From Octopus bimaculoides (Eukaryota): a stretch of DNA of 64,000 bases. This document shows, piece by piece, positions 2,015 to 63,630 of the stretch. The stretch covers positions 50,498,477-50,562,476 of the forward strand of contig NC_068992.1 of assembly GCF_001194135.2 (NCBI RefSeq). Direction: 5' to 3'. The translations under genes were made by a program, and so were the position numbers. Within the stretch, counting starts at the first letter, position 1, and each line of letters opens with the position of its first letter. The notes below the pieces were generated by a model. That model was not told where the DNA came from. It searched no databases and saw nothing but the letters and a program-made list of their open reading frames with translations.

Positions 2015-2187
2015 GGTAAGTCGATTGCGTCGATCCCAATGCTCAACTGGTGCTTAATTTATCGACCCCAAAAGAATGAAAACCAACGTCAACCTGAGTG
2101 GAATTTGAATTCAGATGGTAAAGACAGACGAAATGTCCCTAAGCATTCTGCGCGGCACACTAACGATCCTGCCAGCCAGCCGCCTTT
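2015..2187 (-). mobile_element. SINE family A copy
   Basis: Reverse complement reads aaaggcggctggctggcaggatcgttag...tcgtctgtctttacc...ttcaaattccactcaggttgac...ggggtcgataaattaagcaccagttgagcattgggatcga, collinear with the copies at 41007 and 46081. Confidence 0.9.
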
Positions 2188-6950: not shown

Positions 6951-8430
6951 NNNNNNNNNNNNNNNNNNNNNNNNNNNNNNNNNNNNNNNNNNNNNNNNNN
7001 NNNNNNNNNNNNNNNNNNNNNNNNNNNNNNNNNNNNNNNNNNNNNNNNNNNNNNNNNNNNNNNNNNNNNNNNNNNNNNNNNNNNNNNNNNNNNNNNNNNN
7101 NNNNNNNNNNNNNNNNNNNNNNNNNNNNNNNNNNNNNNNNNNNNNNNNNNNNNNNNNNNNNNNNNNNNNNNNNNNNNNNNNNNNNNNNNNNNNNNNNNNN
7201 NNNNNNNNNNNNNNNNNNNNNNNNNNNNNNNNNNNNNNNNNNNNNNNNNNNNNNNNNNNNNNNNNNNNNNNNNNNNNNNNNNNNNNNNNNNNNNNNNNNN
7301 NNNNNNNNNNNNNNNNNNNNNNNNNNNNNNNNNNNNNNNNNNNNNNNNNNNNNNNNNNNNNNNNNNNNNNNNNNNNNNNNNNNNNNNNNNNNNNNNNNNN
7401 NNNNNNNNNNNNNNNNNNNNNNNNNNNNNNNNNNNNNNNNNNNNNNNNNNNNNNNNNNNNNNNNNNNNNNNNNNNNNNNNNNNNNNNNNNNNNNNNNNNN
7501 NNNNNNNNNNNNNNNNNNNNNNNNNNNNNNNNNNNNNNATATATATATATATATATATAAGTTGATAGCTCATGCTTGTATGCATACATATTGTAAAAGG
7601 TAATTTCCTATACAGAGACAGACAGCTTAAAGCTTTTGACAGAGCGGAAATGAGATTTTGTAAGTATCAGTAAAATACCTCCTACACTTGGAAATCGAAG
7701 CTTAGCCACAGACTTGGCATCCGAAGTTCTCATGCTAAATGTACAGTGTTCTCGACAGTTGATTCATATAATTAAGCTTATTGCACACTTTAATTGAAAA
7801 AAGGATAATTAAAATACACTGTAGCATTCAAATAGCGCGGAGTTCAGCGTGTGAATGTTTCGATCGACTGTCATATGAATAAAATAGTAAGAGTGGCTGA
7901 TGTCATGCGCACAGCTAATCACGAGTTATAAGATTCTTATCAAAAATGAATAACGTTTGAGAGTACTGGAGAATAGCTTTTATCACGGAAAAACCAAGAA
8001 ATATTCAGAGACAATTCCTTGTGAAGCAGTAATGTTTACAATTTGGAAGTGTTTTTACTAATACATTTTTATTAAATCATGACAACAACTGACTTGGTAT
8101 TCAATTATATTTTTCATCAAATAATTTTTGTTTCTAAATTAGATTGATAATAAATTAAATAGTATGTAATTAAATATAGTTAGTATCTGAAATAAAATAA
8201 AATAATATGATTCACAAATGAGGCATATGACCATAATGTTTAGTGGAGTGCACTAAACGGAGAGTGCATTCTACTTGAGTTATTGAAATAGTTATCTGAT
8301 ACTCTGCTCTATCATCCCTGGCAGAATGCGTGGACAATTTAACATCCATGGGATGGGAATTGAACATAGAAAGTAATTTCACTCAAAACCAAGGGGAACT
8401 TGGTTCATATTTTACTGAATCTACCGTTCA

Positions 8431-8851
8431 TTGCCATTCAAACAAGGGACTGTCAATGCTGAAATCTACAAGCAGATTTTTACACGACATAGCCTTCCAC
8501 ATCTCCGATACTCGTCAGTTCAACCACCTATATTCGTACAGAACAACGCTGCCTGTCACACTGCGGAGGGAGATTTTTTGAGTGACGAAGGTGTTGATAT
8601 CATGGACTGGCCACCTCAAAGTCCCGATCTCAACACTATAGAAAACGTTAGGAAGTTTACTAGAAATGGAGCGCGAAGGAGAAATTCAAAGAACCAAGAT
8701 GAACTCTGGGAATTATTGAAAAACGTTTTGAAAAAAAGTAATTCAGTCCTGTGGTAACAGATATCAAGTGATTAGGAATGTTTCTTTGTCGTTCTTCTTC
8801 CCTTTTTCAAATGCTTTTTTTAAGTGACCCTGAACTTTTGACCGTTGCAGT
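8431..8851 (+). mobile_element. Decayed Tc1-family transposase C-terminal catalytic region
   Basis: ORF 8431-8757 contains GTVNAEIY..., IFVQNNAACHTA (QDN catalytic D changed to N) and MDWPPQSPDLNTIEN, the Tc1 DD34E signature. A possible right-TIR remnant aacttttgaccgttgcagt lies at about 8833-8851. Confidence 0.85.
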
Positions 8852-15829: not shown

Positions 15830-16480
15830 TAGCACGGCAATACTTGTCCCTACATCAACAGCACTACAGCTATCACTGCCTGGAAGTTACAATTTCCAAA
15901 CTATATATTGGAACATTCAAATTAGCAATGCATTTAAATTGGGGAAAAAGAATTGGAGATCGCTTTAGCAAGGATATTCGAAGCATAATACTACATATCG
16001 CCACCCACTTCAACACTAGGGATCATTGCATCACTTCCTAACAAAGGTTCGGCATTTCTGCTCATGGTAGTACTACATACTGAAGAAAATGGATGATTAA
16101 ACGTTTAATTTTAGAGCTAATTAGCATGTAAGCGATATGCTTATGCGAACAAGTTTTCCTTCTAGTCACACATCTCTTAGTTCAGCTATCACTATCGTAT
16201 CCTTCAATTTCTCTCTCACTCCATCTTTTCTTTTCGCTTCATTCTCGCCTTTTCCCCTTCTCATTTCATTTCTCTTTTCAGATATCTTTCTCACCTAGTT
16301 TCTGTCTCCTGCTACTATCCTCCCACATATGGTTCTCCCGTAATAGTTGCAGTTAGAGCTCAAAACTCTACTGTCACTTTTTTAGTTTTACTCTTTCCTT
16401 GAAGAAGGACTGTGTCCGAAACGTTGGAGTTTTTCACTCACCAGACTAAGTTCACTGTATTTTGTTCTATCGATCTTAGT
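15830..16480 (+). mobile_element. 3' remnant of a Penelope-like retroelement (GIY-YIG C-terminus plus hammerhead-bearing terminal region)
   Basis: Frame-broken peptides TCPYI (15842-15856), KLYIG, GKRIGDRFSKDIRSI..IATHFN..H (to about 16020) and RKWMIKRLILEL (16083-16119) match the PLE endonuclease pattern C..CPYI / YIG / R..RF.EH...VA.HFN / RK..E..LI..L. A pyrimidine-rich UTR and an HHR-like motif at 16399-16429 follow. Confidence 0.7.
16395..16429 (+). ncRNA. Minimal hammerhead-like motif in a PLE terminal region
   Basis: ttcc TTGAAGA A GGAC tgt GTCC GAAA CG TT ggag: 4-bp stem I, 4-bp stem II, palindromic AACGTT stem III, with C3 changed to T. Confidence 0.55.
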
Positions 16481-24190: not shown

Positions 24191-24360
24191 TGCTTAGCCG
24201 GATTTCGTCTGTCTTTACGTTCTAAATTCAAATTCCGCCTACGTCGACTTCGTCTTTTAACCTTTCGGGGTCGATAAAATAAGTACCAGTGGAGAAGTGG
24301 AGTCGATGTAATCAACTGACTCCCGCTCCCTAAATTGCTGGCCTTGTGCCAAAATAGAAT
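24191..24360 (+). mobile_element. SINE family A copy, 5' truncated
   Basis: tgcttagc...ttcgtctgtctttacgttctaaattcaaattccgcc...cctttcggggtcgataaaataagtaccag...ggccttgtgccaaaa. Confidence 0.9.
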
Positions 24361-32126: not shown

Positions 32127-32959
32127 TATATATATATATAGTAAATTGTTGTATATATTGGAGTGGGTGTCTAGAGTTGTACAGGGAATTAGTGACAGGC
32201 AAAGACGATGATGTCCATGAGGAATCTCTGGGCGTTGGGAGAAATGAATAGGCTGGTCTTTTATCGGGCCGCCGGGACCTATAGATAATTTCCAGAAGTC
32301 CTTAACCTGGGAGAGCTACGGGGAGTGGGTGCTCTACCGGTTCGAGACAAGCTCTACAAACACGCACTGCTGTCAGACGGACCTGTACAAGATGTCCGCA
32401 GGGGATGAACCGTTCTGTATGCACTCATCCAGTTGACATGTGGAACTTTGCTGGAGAGCCGTTTTTGCTCGTAGGATGGATCCGGTTATCCGCTGAGTCC
32501 ATCATAAATATTGCTTCTCTATTTTTGAGTCGCAAGGGGCAGGTAGTTATCTTTCATCTGATGGCTGTAGCGAAAGAGCTAAATGTGGTGAAAAATTTGA
32601 AAGGATTGAAGGTTGACACTTCCCGCTTCGGCCTAGGCTCACATCATCTTTTTCAACTCCTACTTGAAAAGGTAAGTGAGGTGGCGTAGTAAGTGCTGAC
32701 CTCAAGTAATTTTGCTGTAATATGGATTAATGGGATGAGGATGATCTGAGTTAATGGTCCTATTCTGAGCATGTGCCTGAAGGCAGGAGGGAATGGAGAA
32801 GAGAGAGGCGTCCGCTCGATGTACCTTTGGTACTCGGGTTATCCAGGATGTGTGGGGCTCCTCGGTTGCCGCTAGATGGAGCTATCCCCTTTCGGAGAAT
32901 TTTATTTTTACTGTTAATCGTTATTGTTTTTTTTCACTTAATACGCACTATATATATAT
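32127..32959. mobile_element. GC-richer island bounded by (TA)n on both sides, probable decayed retroelement fragment
   Basis: Visibly higher GC than the flanks, with (TA)n at both ends and stops in all minus frames. No diagnostic motif recognised. Confidence 0.3.
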
Positions 32960-39619: not shown

Positions 39620-39880
39620 CCTTTGCTTTGTAACACAGTGTAGGTAAAAATGCACCGGAGTCTTTAGTCATCTGTCAATTCACAACCAGACCGATAGTAC
39701 TTTCCTTAAGATGTGCGCTGTGCCCGATAAGGCTCCTTTTTGCAAGACATCAATCTTGCATGGGATTTCCACTTGCCTTGAGAAGTCTTGAAGTTTCGAT
39801 GGGATTGAGCCCAACGCTCCGATCACCACTGGTATCACTTGTACATTACACTCTCGCATTCCATAATCTTGCCATTTCAA
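39620..39880 (-). mobile_element. 5'-truncated R4/Dong-type element (endonuclease C-terminus plus 3' UTR) embedded in (TAA)n
   Basis: IEMARLW (1-nt frameshift) GMRECNVQVIPVVIGALGSIP...LQKGALSGTAHILRKVL*, then a 60-nt UTR and an (AAT)5(AAC)n tail. A long (AAT)n at 39885-40020 lies on the 5' side. Confidence 0.88.
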
Positions 39881-40714: not shown

Positions 40715-41375
40715 ACGGTAAAACTCTTCAACAAAGATATAGGTATGGCACTTGCCATAGATAAGTGCGCCATATTTGTTTTAAAATAGGGACAAGTAGT
40801 CAGCGGGGATGACACTCAATTACCGGATGTTAAGACATTAAAACCACTGGAATGAGAGAGTTATAAGTATCTAGGAATATTAGAATGTGACAGAGTACTA
40901 TAGAGATGAAAAATTAAATTGAGAAGTTAATGAAGTCAAAGCTAAACATCCAAATCCAGTGAAGTCTGTAAATACATATGCAATTTCATTAATAGTTAGA
41001 TATTCAAGGCGGCGTGCTGGCAGAATCCTTAGCAAGCCGGGCGAAATGCTTAGCGGTAATTCGTCTGTCTTTACTTTCTGAGTTCAAATTCAGCCGAGGT
41101 CGACTTTGCGTTTCATCTTTTCGGGGTCGATGAAATAATTACCAGTCACGCATTGTGGTCGATTTAATTTACCCCTAAATTTTCAAGGCCTTTTGCCTAA
41201 GGTAGAAATAGTTAATAATTAGATATTCAGCAGCTTTTGTAGGCTGAACAAAATCGAAAATAGCAAATCTAAACAGAAGAAATAGGAAGAAATGCAATAT
41301 TAATAGAGGACTTCACCCCAAAGCAGCAGTAGCGAGATTGTATTTGCCTAGAAAACAAAGTAGTAGAGGTTTAGC
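40715..41375 (+). mobile_element. Decayed R4/Dong-type reverse transcriptase fragment interrupted by a SINE
   Basis: TVKLFNKDIGMALAIDKCA, ESYKYLGILECD (about 40856-40890) and KSKLN..VKSVNTYAISL, continuing after the SINE as RYSAAFVG*TK and GLHPK..VARLYLPRKQSSRGL. Confidence 0.85.
41007..41218 (+). mobile_element. Full-length SINE family A with 11-bp target-site duplication
   Basis: TSD ttagatattca at 40996-41006 and 41219-41229. A-box-like tggcagaatccttagc and B-box-like gagttcaaattc. Confidence 0.93.
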
Positions 41376-41521: not shown

Positions 41522-41735
41522 AAGGCTAAAAAAGGGGATCGTTAGAACGCCGGACAAAATGCTTAGCGGCATTTTGTCCGTTTTCACATCCTGAGTTCAA
41601 ATGCCACCGATGTTGACTTTGCCTTTTATCTTTTCAGTGTCGTTAAAATAAGTACCAGTTGGGCACTGAGGTCGATCTAATCGACTTAACTTCTCCCCCG
41701 AAATTGTTAGCATTGTATCAAAATTTGAAATTTTT
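41522..41735 (+). mobile_element. SINE family A copy, followed by the head of another copy at about 41744
   Basis: atcgttagaacgccggacaaaatgcttagcggc...gagttcaaatgccacc...aaaataagtaccagttgggcactgaggtcgatc. Confidence 0.88.
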
Positions 41736-41770
41736 ATTATTTAGGCGGCGAGCAGTCACAATCGTAGCAT

Positions 41771-46080: not shown

Positions 46081-46490
46081 AGGAGGTGATGTTAGCACGC
46101 CGGGCGAAATGCTTAGTGGTATTTCGTCTGTCTTTATGTTCTGAGTTCAAATTCCGCCGAGATCGACTTTGCCTTTCATCCTTTATCGGTCGATAAAATA
46201 AGAACCAATTGAACACTGGGCCTGATATAATCGTCTTACCCATCTAATCTAAATTGATGGCCTCATGCCGGAATTTGAAACCAATATTAAGGCGTCGAGC
46301 AGGCAGAATACTTACCAGCATTTCATTCTGCTATTTACTTTCTAATTTCAAATGTCGCTAAGGTCTAGTTTATATTTCATCCTTTCTGAGTCGATAGAAT
46401 AAGTAATGATTGAGCACAGGAGTAGATCTAATTAACTTCATACCACCCACTAAAATGGTTGTTCTTGTGCCAAAATTTGATGGCAATATC
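46081..46490 (+). mobile_element. Two head-to-tail SINE family A copies (46081-46289 and 46290-46490)
   Basis: The first copy is well preserved (gttagcacgccgggcgaaatgcttagtggtatttcgtctgtc...gagttcaaattccgccgag). The second starts aaggcgtcgagcaggcagaa directly after the first tail. Confidence 0.9.
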
Positions 46491-49358: not shown

Positions 49359-49389
<31 letters not shown>

Positions 49390-49594
49390 NNNNNNNNNNN
49401 NNNNNNNNNNNNNNNNNNNNNNNNNNNNNNNNNNNNNNNNNNNNNNNNNNNNNNNNNNNNNNNNNNNNNNNNNNNNNNNNNNNNNNNNNNNNNNNNNNNN
49501 NNNNNNNNNNNNNNNNNNNNNNNNNNNNNNNNNNNNNNNNNNNNNNNNNNTATATATATATATATCCTTTATTAAAAGCAGCAGAAATATCACA

Positions 49595-49640
49595 AAAACT
49601 GTTACTCAGAGTTTCACATTCCCGTTCGTCATACAGTTTT
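49595..49640 (-). ncRNA. Hammerhead-like motif in the left arm of the palindrome
   Basis: aaaactgt ATGACGA ACG ggaa TGT GAAA CTC t GAG TA acagtttt: perfect 8-bp stem I, with C3 changed to A. Confidence 0.6.
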
Positions 49641-49653
49641 GTTAGATTCTAAC

Positions 49654-49699
49654 AAACCTGTCCGACGAACGGAAACGTGAAACTCTGAGTAAGAGATTT
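49654..49699 (+). ncRNA. Hammerhead-like motif in the right arm of the palindrome
   Basis: aaacctgt CCGACGA ACG gaaa CGT GAAA CTC t GAG TA agagattt: U4>C, stem I with 2 mismatches. Confidence 0.6.
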
Positions 49700-50019
49700 T
49701 GTGATATTTCTGCTGCTTATAATAAAGTATATTGCTCTACCTCTGGTATTTGAGTACTCCTTTTTTCCCACCTTGTTTCATATCTATGTGCTTTCTCCAG
49801 AATATATACATATATATAGATATATATGTATATATGTATGTATGTATGTATATATACGCAAGTACATAGTAGGAATCTCCCCTGAATTTACAGAGTGACA
49901 CGAATGCATACACAGGCTTTATTCTTATTCATGCAATTGGCTGCCGGAGAGCTTAATGTGAAGTCTATTATGTTCATAGATCCTACTCCCTCTCGCTCCC
50001 TATCTCTCTCTCCCTTTCT

Positions 50020-51861: not shown

Positions 51862-54203
51862 NNNNNNNNNNNNNNNNNNNNNNNNNNNNNNNNNNNNNNN
51901 NNNNNNNNNNNNNNNNNNNNNNNNNNNNNNNNNNNNNNNNNNNNNNNNNNNNNNNNNNNNNNNNNNNNNNNNNNNNNNNNNNNNNNNNNNNNNNNNNNNN
52001 NNNNNNNNNNNNNNNNNNNNNNNNNNNNNNNNNNNNNNNNNNNNNNNNNNNNNNNNNNNNNNNNNNNNNNNNNNNNNNNNNNNNNNNNNNNNNNNNNNNN
52101 NNNNNNNNNNNNNNNNNNNNNNNNNNNNNNNNNNNNNNNNNNNNNNNNNNNNNNNNNNNNNNNNNNNNNNNNNNNNNNNNNNNNNNNNNNNNNNNNNNNN
52201 NNNNNNNNNNNNNNNNNNNNNNNNNNNNNNNNNNNNNNNNNNNNNNNNNNNNNNNNNNNNNNNNNNNNNNNNNNNNNNNNNNNNNNNNNNNNNNNNNNNN
52301 NNNNNNNNNNNNNNNNNNNNNNNNNNNNNNNNNNNNNNNNNNNNNNNNNNNNNNNNNNNNNNNNNNNNNNNNNNNNNNNNNNNNNNNNNNNNNNNNNNNN
52401 NNNNNNNNNNNNNNNNNNNNNNNNNNNNNNNNNNNNNNNNNNNNNNNNNNNNNNNNNNNNNNNNNNNNNNNNNNNNNNNNNNNNNNNNNNNNNNNNNNNN
52501 NNNNNNNNNNNNNNNNNNNNNNNNNNNNNNNNNNNNNNNNNNNNNNNNNNNNNNNNTCTCTCTCTGTATAATGTATATATATATATATATATATATATAG
52601 ATTCCACGTGCTACAGTGCAAATCGAAATCATATAATTCGACATATGCCTTAATGAAACCATTAATAAAATATGTGATGATATAAACAAACGAAATTTAA
52701 ACAATTCTACAATTGACAATAAAACTCCACATACAAAATAATTTGCATTACTTAGTTACGGCCTAGTGCAATCTACTTTAGAATCCGGCCCATATCAAAC
52801 TTATCTACCATCCTTCCGATGTCAATGTCATAGGATAAACTATAACTCTGTACCCAAATCTGTTAACTTTCTTTTAAAAATCAATATTAATTTTTCACGG
52901 AGAATTAACCATTTAGAAATAGAAGACAATAAACCTGTTTTGTTCCCTTTCCGCTAAATTCCCTACAGTAAATTATTATGTCAAACAGTTTCACCTTACT
53001 TATACGACCTTTGTATCGATTCAGTTCTAACCCATTGGAGTATTATGAGAGGCAACGTCGCAGAAGTGCGGTGAACATTTTACAGATTAATAGCCCATAC
53101 GCCTCTTAAATAAACATTACGTATAATAGATTGTGGTTGTTCTTTAACTGATTGAATGTCTGTTTGTGTAGTTTGACCACAAAGTTTCAGATCAGTTCAT
53201 TTACTAAACAAATACCTCATCGAAATATCAATATTATTGATTTCAAACATAGCGACATCTACAGATTTTGGTGCATTTGGTTCACTTCGTGTTTGGTTTT
53301 TATTTTATCGATCTGAAAAAGATGGATGCCAGCGTTCACTCCATATAGACTTAACACTGAACGTAAAAAGTCATAATAAAATGCAACAATCTTTGTTGTT
53401 CTTTGTGTTTAAACCATGCCCATCCAACTGTCATCAAGTAGGTATTCATGTAAAGTCTCAGTCGATTGATTATGTGGAATATATGCATTCCTCCAACCGA
53501 GGCTTTCAGTATTTGTTCAGAATTACTGTTGAGACCATCAATTGCTTTCTCTTTTTATTTTGGGCTTACATATACCTTATGCTAATTTTTTTCGAGGTAA
53601 TAGGATACGAATAAAGAGAGATATGGTTTCGATCTTTAACAATCGCAGAGACTGTACCTTGGCTCTCTTGGAGATGAGCCAAGCAGTGCTCCCCACTGCA
53701 TACGACGAATAAGACCATACATTTTCTAATAAGTTGGTAATATTCAAATATATTTGACGTGTATCGTTTTATTCTTCAGGGAAGGATAAAATCTAAGTCG
53801 ACCTAGGCAACATTCGAACACAAACATAAAGAGACAAAACTAAGTCTTAAAAGGCTCCATAAAATCTGCTAATCCACTGATCTCAGGACGAAGTTGATAA
53901 CATTTAACGCAGCCAGAAAGCTTCAAATTTGAGGGACGCCAATATAGGGGACATGGAAAACGAATAGCAGGGTTATTAAAGTGCCGAGGAGAATTCCGTG
54001 CCGTGTTTATTCCGGTTCTTTCCATCTGAAGTTGGAAACTGGCCAAAGTCAGTTTTGTCTTTCATTTCTCCTGGTCGATAAATTATGAACCATTCAGGTT
54101 CTTCAGTCCTGCCAAGTCGAATGAACACCAAAAATGCACGAGTGTCACCTGTGTGTGTGTGTATACATGTGAAACCATCGTTGGAATCCATCGTTGAAAC
54201 CAG

Positions 54204-57244: not shown

Positions 57245-57443
57245 AAGGCGAAGAGTTGACAAAATCGTAACCGCGCCGGGCAAAATGTTTAGCGAAACCT
57301 GTCTTTAAGTTCGGAGTACAAATTTTGCCGAGGTCGACTTTACCATTCGTCCATTCGAACTCGATAAAATAAGTAGCAATTTAACACTGCAGCCGTTCTA
57401 ATCCGATAGTTGCTGAGTTTAATCCAAAATTTAAAACCAATAT
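57245..57443 (+). mobile_element. SINE family A copy
   Basis: aaggcgaagagttgacaaaatcgtaaccgcgccgggcaaaatgtttagcg...gccgaggtcgacttt...cgataaaataagtagc. Confidence 0.85.
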
Positions 57444-59190: not shown

Positions 59191-61268
59191 GTGTTTGTAT
59201 ATATATATATATATGTGAATATATTTGCATATTTATATATAGTTATATGTATGGACAGATGTACATACACACACAAAATCTCTCTCGCACACACACGTAC
59301 ATGTAAAGTGACAGAACATCCCCGTCACCTGACACACGTCCCTTTGTACGTCTACTTACTACTTCAGTAAAGCCAGAGATGAAAGTGATGCTTCTCCATT
59401 ATCTGTCAAGACTTAATTATCATTTCAGAAAGACATGATAATTACGCCTTGACAGATAATGGAGAAGTTGATTCTGTGGTGTTGTTGTTTTCATTATGGT
59501 GACAACAACAACAACAACAACAACAACAGTGGCAATAACAAAATGGATGACAAAGGTGGGGAAGACGGCAATAATTGTGGAAGCGGTAGCGGTGGTACTG
59601 CTACCACTGACGACGACGATGATGTTGAGGGCATTGACGATGAGACGATGAAGAAGACAACCTTGAGGACGACGACGACGACGAGAGGAACGATGTTGAT
59701 AACAACGACGATGACGAGGGTGATGATGATGATGATGTATAGAATGGTTGATGATGACGACGAAGACAACGTCCAAGACAAGAATGACGATGAAAATAAT
59801 GCAGACGATGGTGGTGTTGGCAGTGGTGTTGGGGTGATTATAACGGCTATGCATCATTCTGGTATGGCAATGTTGCCAGAAATGAATTTGTTGACGAATA
59901 TTTATGTCGTTGTTGTACATGACTACGTATTACAAGCCAAACTATGTTCCAGGAAGCTTTTAATCACCGTAACCTCTGCCAAAGCTGTACATTATAACTA
60001 ATTAAGAGCACTTCACCGAAACACTACACGGTCACACCTCATAATATTGTCACAATTCACTTCAGTTTAAGCCAAAAATTCAAATTAGAAATTCGTAGTT
60101 TTTTTTGTTTGTCATTCATTTAACATTTTTTCTTCAATTTAAACAACAGAAGCAATCGAACTGCGAACAGCTGGTGACACACAGACTTATACATAGAGAC
60201 AACTATAATTATACTCACACATTCACTTTATACACGTTTATGTTGGAAAGCGTTCCACAATAATTCATTCAATTTCCTAACGTGAATATAAAAGCACGGT
60301 TGTATAAATACACACACGCCACTCCCACCCCGCTAACACACGCACATACACACACACACACACACGTGTGTGTATAATATATATGTGGTATATATATACA
60401 TTGATGGATAAATATATTAGTAACGCTGAAAAACATGATTGTGTACGCTACAAACGAAAATTCAAAGTGATGGTGAAAGTCGTGTACAAGTGGAAAGGAC
60501 AAAATCTAGCCACTGATGAAACCATTTCAATATTCAACTTTCTTTCCAGCGTATCAATTCGGTAATTGCAAATAAAGTTGGTACATTTCATCTGGAAATT
60601 GCTAGTGATCTCGCAAAACAAAGGAAAAACAAGTGTTGAGGAGTAAAAGAAACACGGGACGTTTAAAAATCTTAATAGAAGAAACAGAGAGGGCAATACA
60701 AATGACTGATTAAAAAATCAAGACCTGTTCCCATTCAGGACCATCAAGTTCATTTCTGGTCCCAAGAATATGGCCCTTATCTTGAGATTCAAGATCCTGA
60801 CCTTTCCGGAAAAACATGGCAGTTCCACAGCCCCACCATTCCAAGTTGACATTAAAGTAAGTAAATGTAGTATCCAGCTAAAATGCGTATGAAAATTTAT
60901 CAATTGGAAAGTCTCATGTAACTTATAGCCACAACATCTATATTTAGTGAACTGTGGTCATTTAGTAGGTGGCCCTGTTTCCAAGGGGACCGCAGACTGC
61001 ATACATTTATACTATCTGTTCTGAGCAAGGCCGTACATATAATTGAAAACGGTAATGAATAGAATCACACTATTTCAGTGTTCTACCTTCTGGATATTGG
61101 TGGATGTCTCCACAAATATTTCTGTGCAGTATTTTGTTTATACTCTCACAGAAATCTCCCATTCGTTTGAGATATTTTGCTTTCAGTTTGTTGTAAAACT
61201 GTTACGTGGCTTTTTAATCATTTATATGAATAGGGTGCCATGCAGAAGCTCTGTGTACTCATTTAACA

Positions 61269-61351: not shown

Positions 61352-61555
61352 GTACGAGGCCGGAGTTTTGGTGGGTAGGGCTTTGGCGATTACATTTAAT
61401 CCAGTGCTCAACTGGCGTTTAATTTATCGGCTCCCCCGAAAAGAGATTAAAGGCAAAGTCAACCTCAGTGGAATTTGAATTTAGAACCTAAAATCGCTCG
61501 AAATGCTGCTAAGAATTTAACACTGCATGCTAACGATTGGACTAGATTGCTGACT
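61352..61555 (-). mobile_element. SINE family A copy
   Basis: ccagtgctcaactgg...aatttatcgg...aaaggcaaagtcaacctcagtggaatttgaa...gctaacgatt is the reverse complement of the family body. Confidence 0.85.
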
Positions 61556-62832: not shown

Positions 62833-62980
62833 CGCCGGGAGAATTGCTTAGCAACATTTCGTCTGTCTTCACGTTCTAAGTTCAAATTCCACCGAGGTTA
62901 TTCTTGCGGAGTCCACAAAATAAGTACCAGTTGACTTAGCTCCTTCACCTAAATTGCTGGGCTTGTGCTAAAGTTTGAGA
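62833..62980 (+). mobile_element. SINE family A copy, 5' truncated and internally deleted
   Basis: cgccgggagaattgcttagcaacatttcgtctgtcttcacgttctaagttcaaattccaccgagg...aaaataagtaccagttga. Confidence 0.85.
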
Positions 62981-63417: not shown

Positions 63418-63630
63418 AAGGACGGTGAAATGGCAGAGCCGTTAGCATACTGGACGAAATGCTTAGCGGTATTTTATGTCACTGCGTTCTGCGTTCAAAT
63501 TCCACCGAGGTCGATTTTGCCTTTCCTTCTTTGATGGTCGATAAATTAAGTACCAGTGAAATACTGGATTCCATATAATCGAGTAGTCCCCTCTCTCAAA
63601 ATTTGAGGCCTCGTGCTTAGAGTAGGAAAG
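63418..63630 (+). mobile_element. SINE family A copy, full length
   Basis: tggcagagccgttagcatactggacgaaatgcttagcgg...gttcaaattccaccgaggtcga...ggtcgataaattaagtaccag...gaggcctcgtgcttagagtagg. Confidence 0.9.

What the first reader, a model, noticed from the sequence alone, without database searches (positions are those of the whole stretch)
49567..49727. Palindromic element carrying a hammerhead-like ribozyme on each strand
Seen: two 80-bp arms, 72/80 identical, are separated by one base. Each strand's 3' arm has the full type-I hammerhead layout: stem I, core (CCGACGA on +, ATGACGA on -), a 3-bp stem II with tetraloop, GAAA, near-palindromic ACTCtGAGT stem III, and a GTA triplet. The minus copy has a perfect 8-bp stem I. 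Established: Penelope-like elements carry minimal type-I hammerheads in their terminal repeats, which can be inverted. Inference: this is a non-autonomous fold-back PLE derivative. A read-through RNA from either strand would form an 80-bp duplex that sequesters the ribozyme and is an ideal ADAR/Dicer substrate, so cleavage could depend on folding kinetics, dimerisation or editing. The DNA could also extrude a cruciform. The ancestral core is unresolved: CTGACGA by combining the arms, or CCGACGA with CpG decay in the left arm.
Basis: partly seen in the sequence, partly recalled or inferred. Interest (0 to 1): 0.75.

Follow-up and report, generated by a model that had tools for sequence, protein, structure and literature searches.

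The report
Palindromic relic of hammerhead retroelement ends
A 171-base DNA palindrome lying in a TA microsatellite consists of two diverged, head-to-head copies of the last ~85 bases of a hammerhead-ribozyme-bearing retroelement (Penelope-like type); each ribozyme copy has a change at an invariant core base, so it is most likely an ordinary dead insertion scar, not a working two-strand ribozyme.

Summary
Each arm, read 5'->3' towards its outer end, has a type-I hammerhead layout. The motif is not chance: it is the only hit in the window to a hammerhead descriptor, which gave 6 one-mismatch hits and no exact hit in 47 Mb of shuffled sequence.

Neither copy is a canonical hammerhead. The + arm has CCGACGA (U4C) and a broken stem I. 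The - arm has AUGACGA (C3A) with intact stems. Both have A10.1-U11.1 and a 3-bp helix II. No Rfam hammerhead model matches, even at E<=10 on 66-nt slices.

The geometry matches published behaviour of Penelope-like element (PLE) insertions: 3' ends outward, 5' ends abutting, a (TA)n target, and a palindromic helix III that forms a double hammerhead in silico. I read it as a one-off, decayed PLE or PLE-mobilised retrozyme insertion scar (confidence 0.55).

A read-through RNA would fold into a -100 kcal/mol hairpin that buries the motif. Family membership, expression, editing and cleavage could not be tested. Interest is low to moderate.

The parts
49562..49646 (-). Left arm: on the - strand, the 3'-terminal ~85 nt of the source element (hammerhead motif plus 3' tail), with its 3' end pointing left into the (TA)n tract
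49647..49647 (.). Single-base spacer (T) at the centre of symmetry, where the 5' ends of the two copies abut
49648..49732 (+). Right arm: the same ~85-nt unit in + orientation, with its 3' end pointing right
49654..49699 (+). + arm hammerhead-like motif. Stem I 49654-61 / 49692-99 (5 of 8 pairs), core CCGACGA 49662-68 (U4C), helix II 49669-78, GAAA 49679-82, helix III 49682-90, GUA with A17 at 49691
   Evidence: Hammerhead fold +1.9 kcal/mol. Fails my descriptor because of the 1.2-2.2 mismatch
49595..49640 (-). - arm hammerhead-like motif. Stem I 49640-33 / 49602-595 (8 perfect pairs), core AUGACGA 49632-26 (C3A), helix II 49625-16 (one G.U pair, GGAA loop), GAAA 49615-12, helix III 49612-04, GUA with A17 at 49603
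   Evidence: Only descriptor hit in the window. Two units cofold into a double hammerhead, -21.7 kcal/mol
49700..49727 (+). 3' tail of the + unit (UGUGAUAUUUCUGCUGCUUAUAAUAAAG) with an AAUAAA hexamer at 49721-49726. 27/28 identical to the other arm's tail
49567..49594 (-). 3' tail of the - unit, with an AAUAAA hexamer at 49573-49568
49362..49566 (.). Flanking (TA)n microsatellite interrupted by a 161-N assembly gap (49390-49550); the presumed insertion target. On the right only TATAT (49728-49732) remains before unique sequence

Best explanation
The element is the scar of one old retrotransposition event by a Penelope-like element (PLE), or by a PLE-mobilised non-autonomous 'retrozyme', into a (TA)n microsatellite. 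Only the last ~85 nt of the template RNA were copied: a minimal type-I hammerhead plus a ~36-41-nt 3' tail. They were copied twice, in opposite orientation, so the two 3' ends face outwards and the two truncated 5' ends abut at 49647.

The likely route is inferred. The PLE protein nicks and extends both target strands, and the two short cDNAs are joined, for example by a template switch from one cDNA to the other. A snap-back of a single cDNA, or a later fold-back duplication at the fragile TA tract, would give the same product.

Since then the arms have drifted apart by about 10.6%. Each hammerhead has lost an invariant core base (U4C on +, C3A on -), and the + copy has also lost stem I. Neither should self-cleave today.

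What remains is a long imperfect DNA palindrome. If transcribed it would be an ~80-bp hairpin RNA, not a ribozyme.

Shown: the palindrome, the motif anatomy, its non-random nature, the core defects, the folding energies and the TA flank. Inferred: the PLE origin, the integration route and the inactivity.
For: (1) The motif is hammerhead-derived, not chance. It is the only descriptor hit in the window. The null rate is 6 one-mismatch hits and 0 exact hits in 47.4 Mb of shuffles.

(2) Orientation. Each arm reads stem I - core - helix II - GAAA - helix III - GUA - stem I' - tail towards its outer end, so the copies are head-to-head with 3' ends outward. Craig et al. 2021 describe strong 5' truncation and an adjacent inverted 5'-truncated copy as typical of PLE insertions, HHRs near the 3' ends, and (TA)n as a preferred target (PMC8557442). 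Cervera & De la Pena 2014 report dual HHRs close together on opposite strands, and many solitary HHRs from truncated PLEs (PMC4209133).

(3) A purified PLE protein cleaves and extends both DNA strands, prefers AT-rich targets and tolerates 5'-truncated templates (PMC11167929).

(4) The left flank is (TA)n and the right flank starts with TATAT.

(5) Helix III (ACUCUGAGU) is quasi-palindromic, as in metazoan type-I and PLE hammerheads that work as dimers. Two - arm units cofold into the classical double hammerhead at -21.7 kcal/mol.

(6) Decay looks neutral. Of the 9 arm differences, 7 lie inside the ~46-nt motif and 2 in the tail and terminus. In the + arm the changes break stem I and U4; the changes at the paired positions 1.5/2.5 are not compensatory.

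(7) No second copy lies in 64 kb. No intact ORF that could encode RT/EN is in the window: the longest N-free ORF is about 200 aa.
Against: - No PLE or retrozyme from this genome could be retrieved, so homology of the arm to a real PLE 3' end is not shown.
- The motif departs from the published PLE min-HHR consensus. It has no extra base between positions 9 and 10.1, A-U instead of G10.1-C11.1, and helix II of 3 bp instead of 6-8.
- Rfam hammerhead models give nothing.
- The arms are equal in length to within 1 nt. Two independent truncations would rarely give that. It needs a coupled mechanism (synchronous two-strand synthesis, snap-back or DNA fold-back), or it points to a true fold-back element.
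- Two of the arm differences are CpG/TpG. One is at core position 4, so the common ancestor may already have had the non-canonical CCGACGA.
Confidence: 0.55

Rival explanations
1. One reading: a dispersed, non-autonomous fold-back family derived from a PLE or retrozyme terminus. The palindrome is the mobile unit, and transcripts of either strand end in a valid 3' terminus and carry a sense hammerhead.
For: The arms are equal in length to within 1 nt, which a unit-length element explains directly. Both strands carry the same 3' tail with AAUAAA. PLE-derived non-autonomous elements are an accepted category (retrozymes: PMC7229834; bioRxiv 10.64898/2026.07.22.740005).
Against: No second copy lies in 64 kb, and none was found in the searchable collections; those collections probably do not hold this genome. 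A -100 kcal/mol hairpin would be a poor RT template. Both hammerheads are defective and the arm differences show no compensatory change. One transcript holds one sense and one antisense unit, so the cis dimer these hammerheads need cannot form.
Confidence: 0.2
2. An ordinary hairpin MITE of a cut-and-paste DNA transposon (Tc1/mariner- or Stowaway-like, with a TA target duplication) whose arm merely resembles a hammerhead.
For: It is a near-full-length palindrome of ~170 bp flanked by TA on both sides. A Tc1/mariner transposase fragment lies in the window at 8431-8757.
Against: A chance hammerhead layout with <=1 core mismatch and an 8-bp stem I is expected fewer than about 1e-5 times in ~340 nt. 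Stem I and helix III are internal inverted repeats within one arm, which a MITE does not need. The termini do not give a clean TA/TIR junction: there is an extra C on the left.
Confidence: 0.08
3. A host-used hairpin RNA locus (hpRNA/endo-siRNA, miRNA-like precursor or ADAR substrate) in which the hammerhead remnant is incidental or acts as a conditional processing site.
For: The hairpin is very stable: about 80 bp with a few mismatches, z = -21. Weak sub-threshold similarity to hairpin models (mir-1892, 22 bits against a gathering score of 86) only reflects the hairpin shape.
Against: No conservation data are available. No Rfam family reaches threshold. Hammerhead helices form with probability 1e-4 or less even in an isolated arm.
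Confidence: 0.07
4. An assembly artefact: a false fold-back join next to the 161-N gap in a TA repeat.
For: The element touches a gap in a microsatellite. PLE tandem and inverted structures are known to upset short-read assemblies (PMC8557442).
Against: The arms differ at 9 of 85 positions, whereas fold-back artefacts are exact reverse complements. The unique right flank is continuous.
Confidence: 0.04

Closest known systems
Minimal type-I hammerheads of Penelope-like elements, including 'dual' motifs on opposite strands and solitary motifs from truncated PLEs (Cervera & De la Pena 2014, PMC4209133)
   Same: Type-I topology, a quasi-palindromic helix III suited to dimer action, no loop-loop tertiary contacts, location close to the 3' end of the inserted unit, two motifs on opposite strands close together, and high sequence drift.
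   Different: Cleavage sites are 88 nt apart here, against the reported ~100-700 bp. Helix II is 3 bp (6-8 reported). There is no bulged base after A9. 10.1-11.1 is A-U, not G-C. Stem I is 8 bp (4-5 reported). Both cores are mutated. No PLE ORF or pLTR is nearby.
PLE insertion architecture: a 5'-truncated copy with an adjacent inverted 5'-truncated copy, at a (TA)n target (Craig et al. 2021, PMC8557442). Two-strand cleavage and extension by PLE protein (PMC11167929)
   Same: Head-to-head orientation with 3' ends outward, extreme 5' truncation, and a TA microsatellite target.
   Different: Both copies are truncated at the same base, giving a near-perfect palindrome with a 1-nt spacer. The published pattern is a short inverted copy next to a longer unit.
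Metazoan non-LTR retrozymes: tandem 170-400-bp repeats with type-I hammerheads, expressed as circRNAs (Cervera & de la Pena 2020, PMC7229834)
   Same: Small, AT-rich, non-coding units with a type-I hammerhead and a short helix III. The total size (~170 nt) and strong self-complementarity recall retrozyme circles.
   Different: The arrangement is inverted, not tandem. There is only one sense hammerhead per strand, so no unit can be excised and circularised.
Double hammerhead of newt satellite 2 and ASBVd (Forster et al. 1988, as cited in PMC4209133)
   Same: Two - arm units are predicted to pair through helix III and swap stem I strands.
   Different: This is predicted only. The genomic arrangement does not provide two sense units in one transcript, and the core is C3A.
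Hairpin MITEs and hpRNA loci
   Same: A ~170-bp near-perfect palindrome with TA flanks, a potential Dicer/ADAR substrate and a potential cruciform.
   Different: The arms have the internal architecture of a ribozyme-bearing retroelement terminus. No family, TSD or transposase-type TIR is shown.

Membership tests
Hammerhead ribozyme, type I | Invariant core C3-U4-G5-A6-N7-G8-A9 | tested here: not met
   + arm CCGACGA (U4C) and - arm AUGACGA (C3A). Single changes at C3 or G8 abolish cleavage in a PLE hammerhead (PMC11167929). A3 with G8 is not the known U3-A8 covariant.
Hammerhead ribozyme, type I | G12-A13-A14 followed by the A15.1-U16.1 pair and an N-U-H cleavage triplet | tested here: met
   GAAA, then ACUCUGAGU, then A17 (triplet GUA) in both arms.
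Hammerhead ribozyme, type I | Three helices around the core, with helix I open and helices II and III closed | tested here: inconclusive
   - arm: stem I 8 bp, helix II 3 bp + GGAA, helix III 3 bp + CUG; fold energy -3.8 against an MFE of -10.0 kcal/mol. + arm: stem I has 5 of 8 pairs; fold energy +1.9 kcal/mol. G10.1-C11.1 is replaced by A-U.
Hammerhead ribozyme, type I | Match to the Rfam covariance models (Hammerhead_1 and relatives) | tested here: not met
   There is no hit at gathering score in the window. No hammerhead family appears at E<=10 on 301 nt or on each 66-nt arm, where hits of 9-11 bits were listed.
Hammerhead ribozyme, type I | Stem covariation across family members | tested here: inconclusive
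   Only two sequences (the arms) are available. One change is compatible (G-C to G.U in helix II). Three changes disrupt stem I in the + arm. None is compensatory.
Hammerhead ribozyme, type I | Site-specific self-cleavage | not testable with these tools
   This needs in vitro transcription, or 5'-OH/cyclic-phosphate end mapping in RNA.
Penelope-like element (insertion remnant) | RT plus GIY-YIG ORF, pLTRs | tested here: not met
   The longest N-free ORFs in the window are about 200 aa and are mostly microsatellite-derived. Ten best-looking ORFs gave only a DDE_3 hit. ORFs within 1 kb are repeat-derived. A heavily truncated copy is not expected to keep an ORF.
Penelope-like element (insertion remnant) | Hammerhead close to the 3' end of the inserted unit | tested here: met
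   The cleavage site lies 36-41 nt from the outer end of each arm. Compare Craig 2021 fig. 1 legend and PMC11167929.
Penelope-like element (insertion remnant) | 5' truncation with an adjacent inverted 5'-truncated copy | tested here: met
   Head-to-head arms with 3' ends outward. The pattern is described in PMC8557442.
Penelope-like element (insertion remnant) | AT-rich / (TA)n target | tested here: met
   (TA)n on the left and TATAT on the right. (TA)n preference is described in PMC8557442 and an AT-rich cleavage preference in PMC11167929.
Penelope-like element (insertion remnant) | Sequence homology of the arm to the 3' end of a PLE or retrozyme of the same genome | not testable with these tools
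   The source genome is not in any searchable collection.
Hairpin MITE (DNA transposon derivative) | Multi-copy family with TIRs and target-site duplications | tested here: inconclusive
   There is a single copy in 64 kb. The TA flanks are compatible with a TA duplication but cannot be told apart from the microsatellite. The genome-wide count is not available.

The most novel reading that the evidence does not exclude
The palindrome is one copy of a transposition-competent fold-back retroelement family. Transcription from either strand would yield an RNA with a valid PLE-type 3' end and a sense hammerhead. Ribozyme action would be gated by the competing 80-bp hairpin, through co-transcriptional folding, trans-dimerisation through the palindromic helix III, or ADAR unwinding. 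This would be an ambisense, viroid-like design embedded in animal DNA.
Probability: 0.08. Interest if true: 0.6.

Novelty: new member of a known kind. Interest (0 to 1): 0.22.

Why it matters
It matters mostly as annotation. The case shows that a striking 'ribozyme on both strands' palindrome can be explained by known Penelope-like element (PLE) integration behaviour: two-strand priming, 5' truncation and a TA target.

Two points have some wider value. First, the exactly symmetric truncation (1-nt spacer) is a concrete genomic product. Any model of PLE integration, such as a dimeric RT working on both strands or a cDNA snap-back, should be able to produce it. A genome-wide census of such symmetric scars would test those models.

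Second, long AT-flanked palindromes are potential fragile sites and sources of dsRNA, whatever their origin.

Tried and rejected
- Rfam, four searches. No hammerhead family matched. The only hits were sub-threshold chance or hairpin-shape matches (rli48, mir-1892, DicF and others), which I rejected.
- Other copies in the window, by pattern with 3 mismatches and by blastn word 7. None found.
- Public collections. The hammerhead pattern gave nothing in viral, metagenome or GTDB genome contigs. The 3'-tail 21-mer gave nothing in viral contigs. It gave 3 metagenome hits, L001-L003, which have no hammerhead upstream and are chance matches.
- A protein-database search with all open-frame peptides of both arms, hoping for spurious ORF calls across family copies. 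No hit.
- Exact look-ups of three ORFs overlapping or next to the element. None is on record.
- Mariner fragment search, to find same-genome contigs and the organism. It gave only two Logan ORFs at 63-68% identity on ~1-kb contigs (73-79% nt identity) from runs SRR11869384-94. A paper search for those run numbers was uninformative.
- Supplementary files of the key PLE and HHR papers are not held, or lack the sequence.
There is therefore no read support, expression, editing, small-RNA or end-mapping evidence.
- I considered an alternative register that would give a canonical CUGANGA in either arm. None exists.
- I considered the assembly-artefact reading and rated it unlikely, because the arms differ at 9 positions.

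Full report
**What is there**

The sequence at 49562-49732 is a 171-bp imperfect palindrome. The arms are 49562-49646 and 49648-49732, 76/85 complementary, around a single T at 49647.

As single-stranded RNA it folds into one hairpin of -100.5 kcal/mol (shuffles -26.5 +/- 3.5, z = -21). As DNA it folds to -66.5 kcal/mol.

On the left it abuts a (TA)n microsatellite that contains a 161-N assembly gap (49390-49550). On the right, TATAT is followed by unique sequence.

The window is AT-rich (34% GC). Simple repeats cover 9% of the non-N bases, and it has 17 N gaps, each flanked by simple-repeat (microsatellite) sequence where I looked. It looks like a draft assembly of an invertebrate genome.

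**Hammerhead anatomy**

Read towards its outer end, each arm has the order of a type-I hammerhead (coordinates): stem I 5' strand, 7-nt core, 3-bp helix II closed by a GNRA tetraloop, GAAA, ACUCUGAGU, A17 (triplet GUA), stem I 3' strand. A 28-nt tail containing AAUAAA follows.

- The - arm has an 8-bp perfect stem I, and its core is AUGACGA (C3A).
- The + arm has CCGACGA (U4C), and three substitutions leave only 5 of 8 stem I pairs.
- In both arms the 10.1-11.1 pair is A-U, not the usual G-C.
- A 1-nt loop is impossible, so helix III can only be 3 bp with a CUG loop in a monomer.
- The hammerhead fold of the isolated - arm is worth -3.8 kcal/mol against an MFE of -10.0, giving a probability of about 1e-4. 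For the + arm it is +1.9 kcal/mol.
- Two - arm units are predicted to form the classical double hammerhead at -21.7 kcal/mol, with intermolecular helix III (8 bp with a central U.U) and swapped stem I strands. This is how metazoan type-I and PLE hammerheads are thought to act (PMC4209133).

**Is it chance?**

I scanned with a type-I descriptor: CUGANGA / GAAA / U16.1 with at most one mismatch, helix II >=3 bp, helix III >=3 bp, H17, and contiguous stem I >=4.

- In the real window (both strands) it finds only the - arm.
- In 400 dinucleotide-preserving shuffles (47.4 Mb) it finds six one-mismatch hits (stem I = 4 in five, 7 in one) and no exact hit.
- That is about 0.015 expected per window, and far less inside a 171-bp palindrome. 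The arms therefore descend from a hammerhead-type sequence.
- In a Gb-sized genome some hundreds of such one-mismatch hits would still arise by chance. The argument rests on the long stem I and on the context.

All Rfam hammerhead models are silent. This holds at gathering score over the window, at E<=10 over 301 nt, and over each 66-nt arm, where unrelated 9-11-bit hits were listed. This fits a minimal, non-canonical and mutated motif. It means the arms fail that membership test.

**What it most likely is**

Published properties of Penelope-like elements (PLEs) match the geometry.

- PLE insertions are strongly 5'-truncated and often have an inverted 5'-truncated copy directly adjacent. They carry hammerheads near their 3' ends and favour (TA)n targets (PMC8557442).
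- Thousands of solitary hammerheads from truncated PLEs occur in animal genomes, as do 'dual' hammerheads on opposite strands ~100-700 bp apart (PMC4209133).
- A purified PLE protein cleaves and extends both strands of an AT-rich target, accepts 5'-truncated templates and does not need ribozyme cleavage for insertion. In that system single C3 or G8 changes abolish cleavage (PMC11167929).

Here the two copies lie head-to-head with 3' ends outward in a TA tract. I therefore read the element as one old, abortive PLE insertion, or an insertion of a PLE-mobilised retrozyme, of which only two ~85-nt 3' ends remain.

The 10.6% divergence between arms looks like neutral decay. Seven of nine differences fall inside the motif. 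The + arm changes break stem I and U4. The two changes at the paired positions 1.5/2.5 are not compensatory.

**An unexplained detail**

The arms are equal in length to within one base. Independent truncations would rarely give that.

A coupled process is needed. It could be synchronous synthesis on both strands by a dimeric RNP followed by a switch from one cDNA to the other. It could be snap-back of one cDNA. It could also be a later DNA fold-back duplication at the TA tract. All of these are inferences.

I could not separate these possibilities.

**Ancestral core**

The arms differ at core positions 3 (C/A) and 4 (C/U).

- CUGACGA needs one change in each arm.
- CCGACGA needs two changes in the - arm, and one of them is a CpG-to-TpG transition. 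A second CpG/TpG difference, at 11.3, also points to CpG decay in the - arm.
- The window's CpG o/e is 0.80.

The ancestor may therefore already have been non-canonical.

Sequestration of the motif in a read-through RNA is supported thermodynamically. A palindromic transcript holds one sense and one antisense unit, so it cannot form the cis dimer. With both cores mutated, cleavage is unlikely in any case.

The hairpin would be a generic dsRNA substrate, and the DNA a potential cruciform. Both points are plausible and untested.

The read laying attempt used run ids from the look-up of encoding contigs, not from the look-up of sequencing runs as the tool specifies, and was not sent.

**Verdict**

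The element is PLE-type and hammerhead-derived, and the copies are inverted. A full ribozyme on each strand, a mobile fold-back family and regulation are not shown.
- It is a new member of a known kind, with low to moderate interest (0.22).
- The most novel reading still open is a transposition-competent ambisense fold-back hammerhead element gated by its own hairpin. I give it about 8%.

Noticed in passing
window 46091-46310; also 2015-2164(-), 24191-24350, 41029-41144, 41533-41762, 57274-57389, 61401-61534(-), 62833-62896, 63441-63581: A SINE-like interspersed repeat of ~120-230 bp (core ...gagttcaaattccgccgagatcgactttgcctttcatcc...) occurs at least 9 times in 64 kb at 71-87% identity. ARAGORN finds no tRNA-like head. 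From memory it resembles cephalopod (octopus) SINEs, but the organism was not established.
   Followed up: partly
window 8431-8757 (+): A degenerate Tc1/mariner transposase fragment (Pfam DDE_3, E = 9e-8). The only database relatives are two short Logan ORFs at 63-68% identity, from runs SRR11869384-94.
   Followed up: yes
window 39680-39880 (-): A 66-aa ORF (..VIPVVIGALGSIPSKL..LQKGALSGTAHILRKVL..) looks, from memory, like the conserved C-terminal tail of a LINE ORF2. It has no Pfam hit.
   Followed up: partly
window 49390-49550 and 16 other N runs (e.g. 832-1088, 6951-7538, 51862-52556): The 17 assembly gaps (4,802 N in total) sit inside or beside microsatellites, mostly (TA)n and (CA)n, where I looked. 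The gap next to the element happens to be 161 N, the same length as the reported finding, which I take as coincidence.
   Followed up: partly
window 16399-16425 (+): A relaxed 'minimal hammerhead' descriptor gives a second hit with one mismatch (UUGAAGA core, stem I only 4 bp). This is in line with the chance rate seen in shuffles and is probably meaningless.
   Followed up: partly
window 32250-32900: A locally GC-rich island (43% against 34%) has overlapping ORFs of 60-127 aa on both strands and no Pfam match. It could be an unclassified repeat or an exon.
   Followed up: partly
window 59420-60001: Long ORFs on both strands (166-180 aa) are made of N/D/T/V-rich low-complexity runs from trinucleotide repeats. 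They are probably not coding.
   Followed up: no
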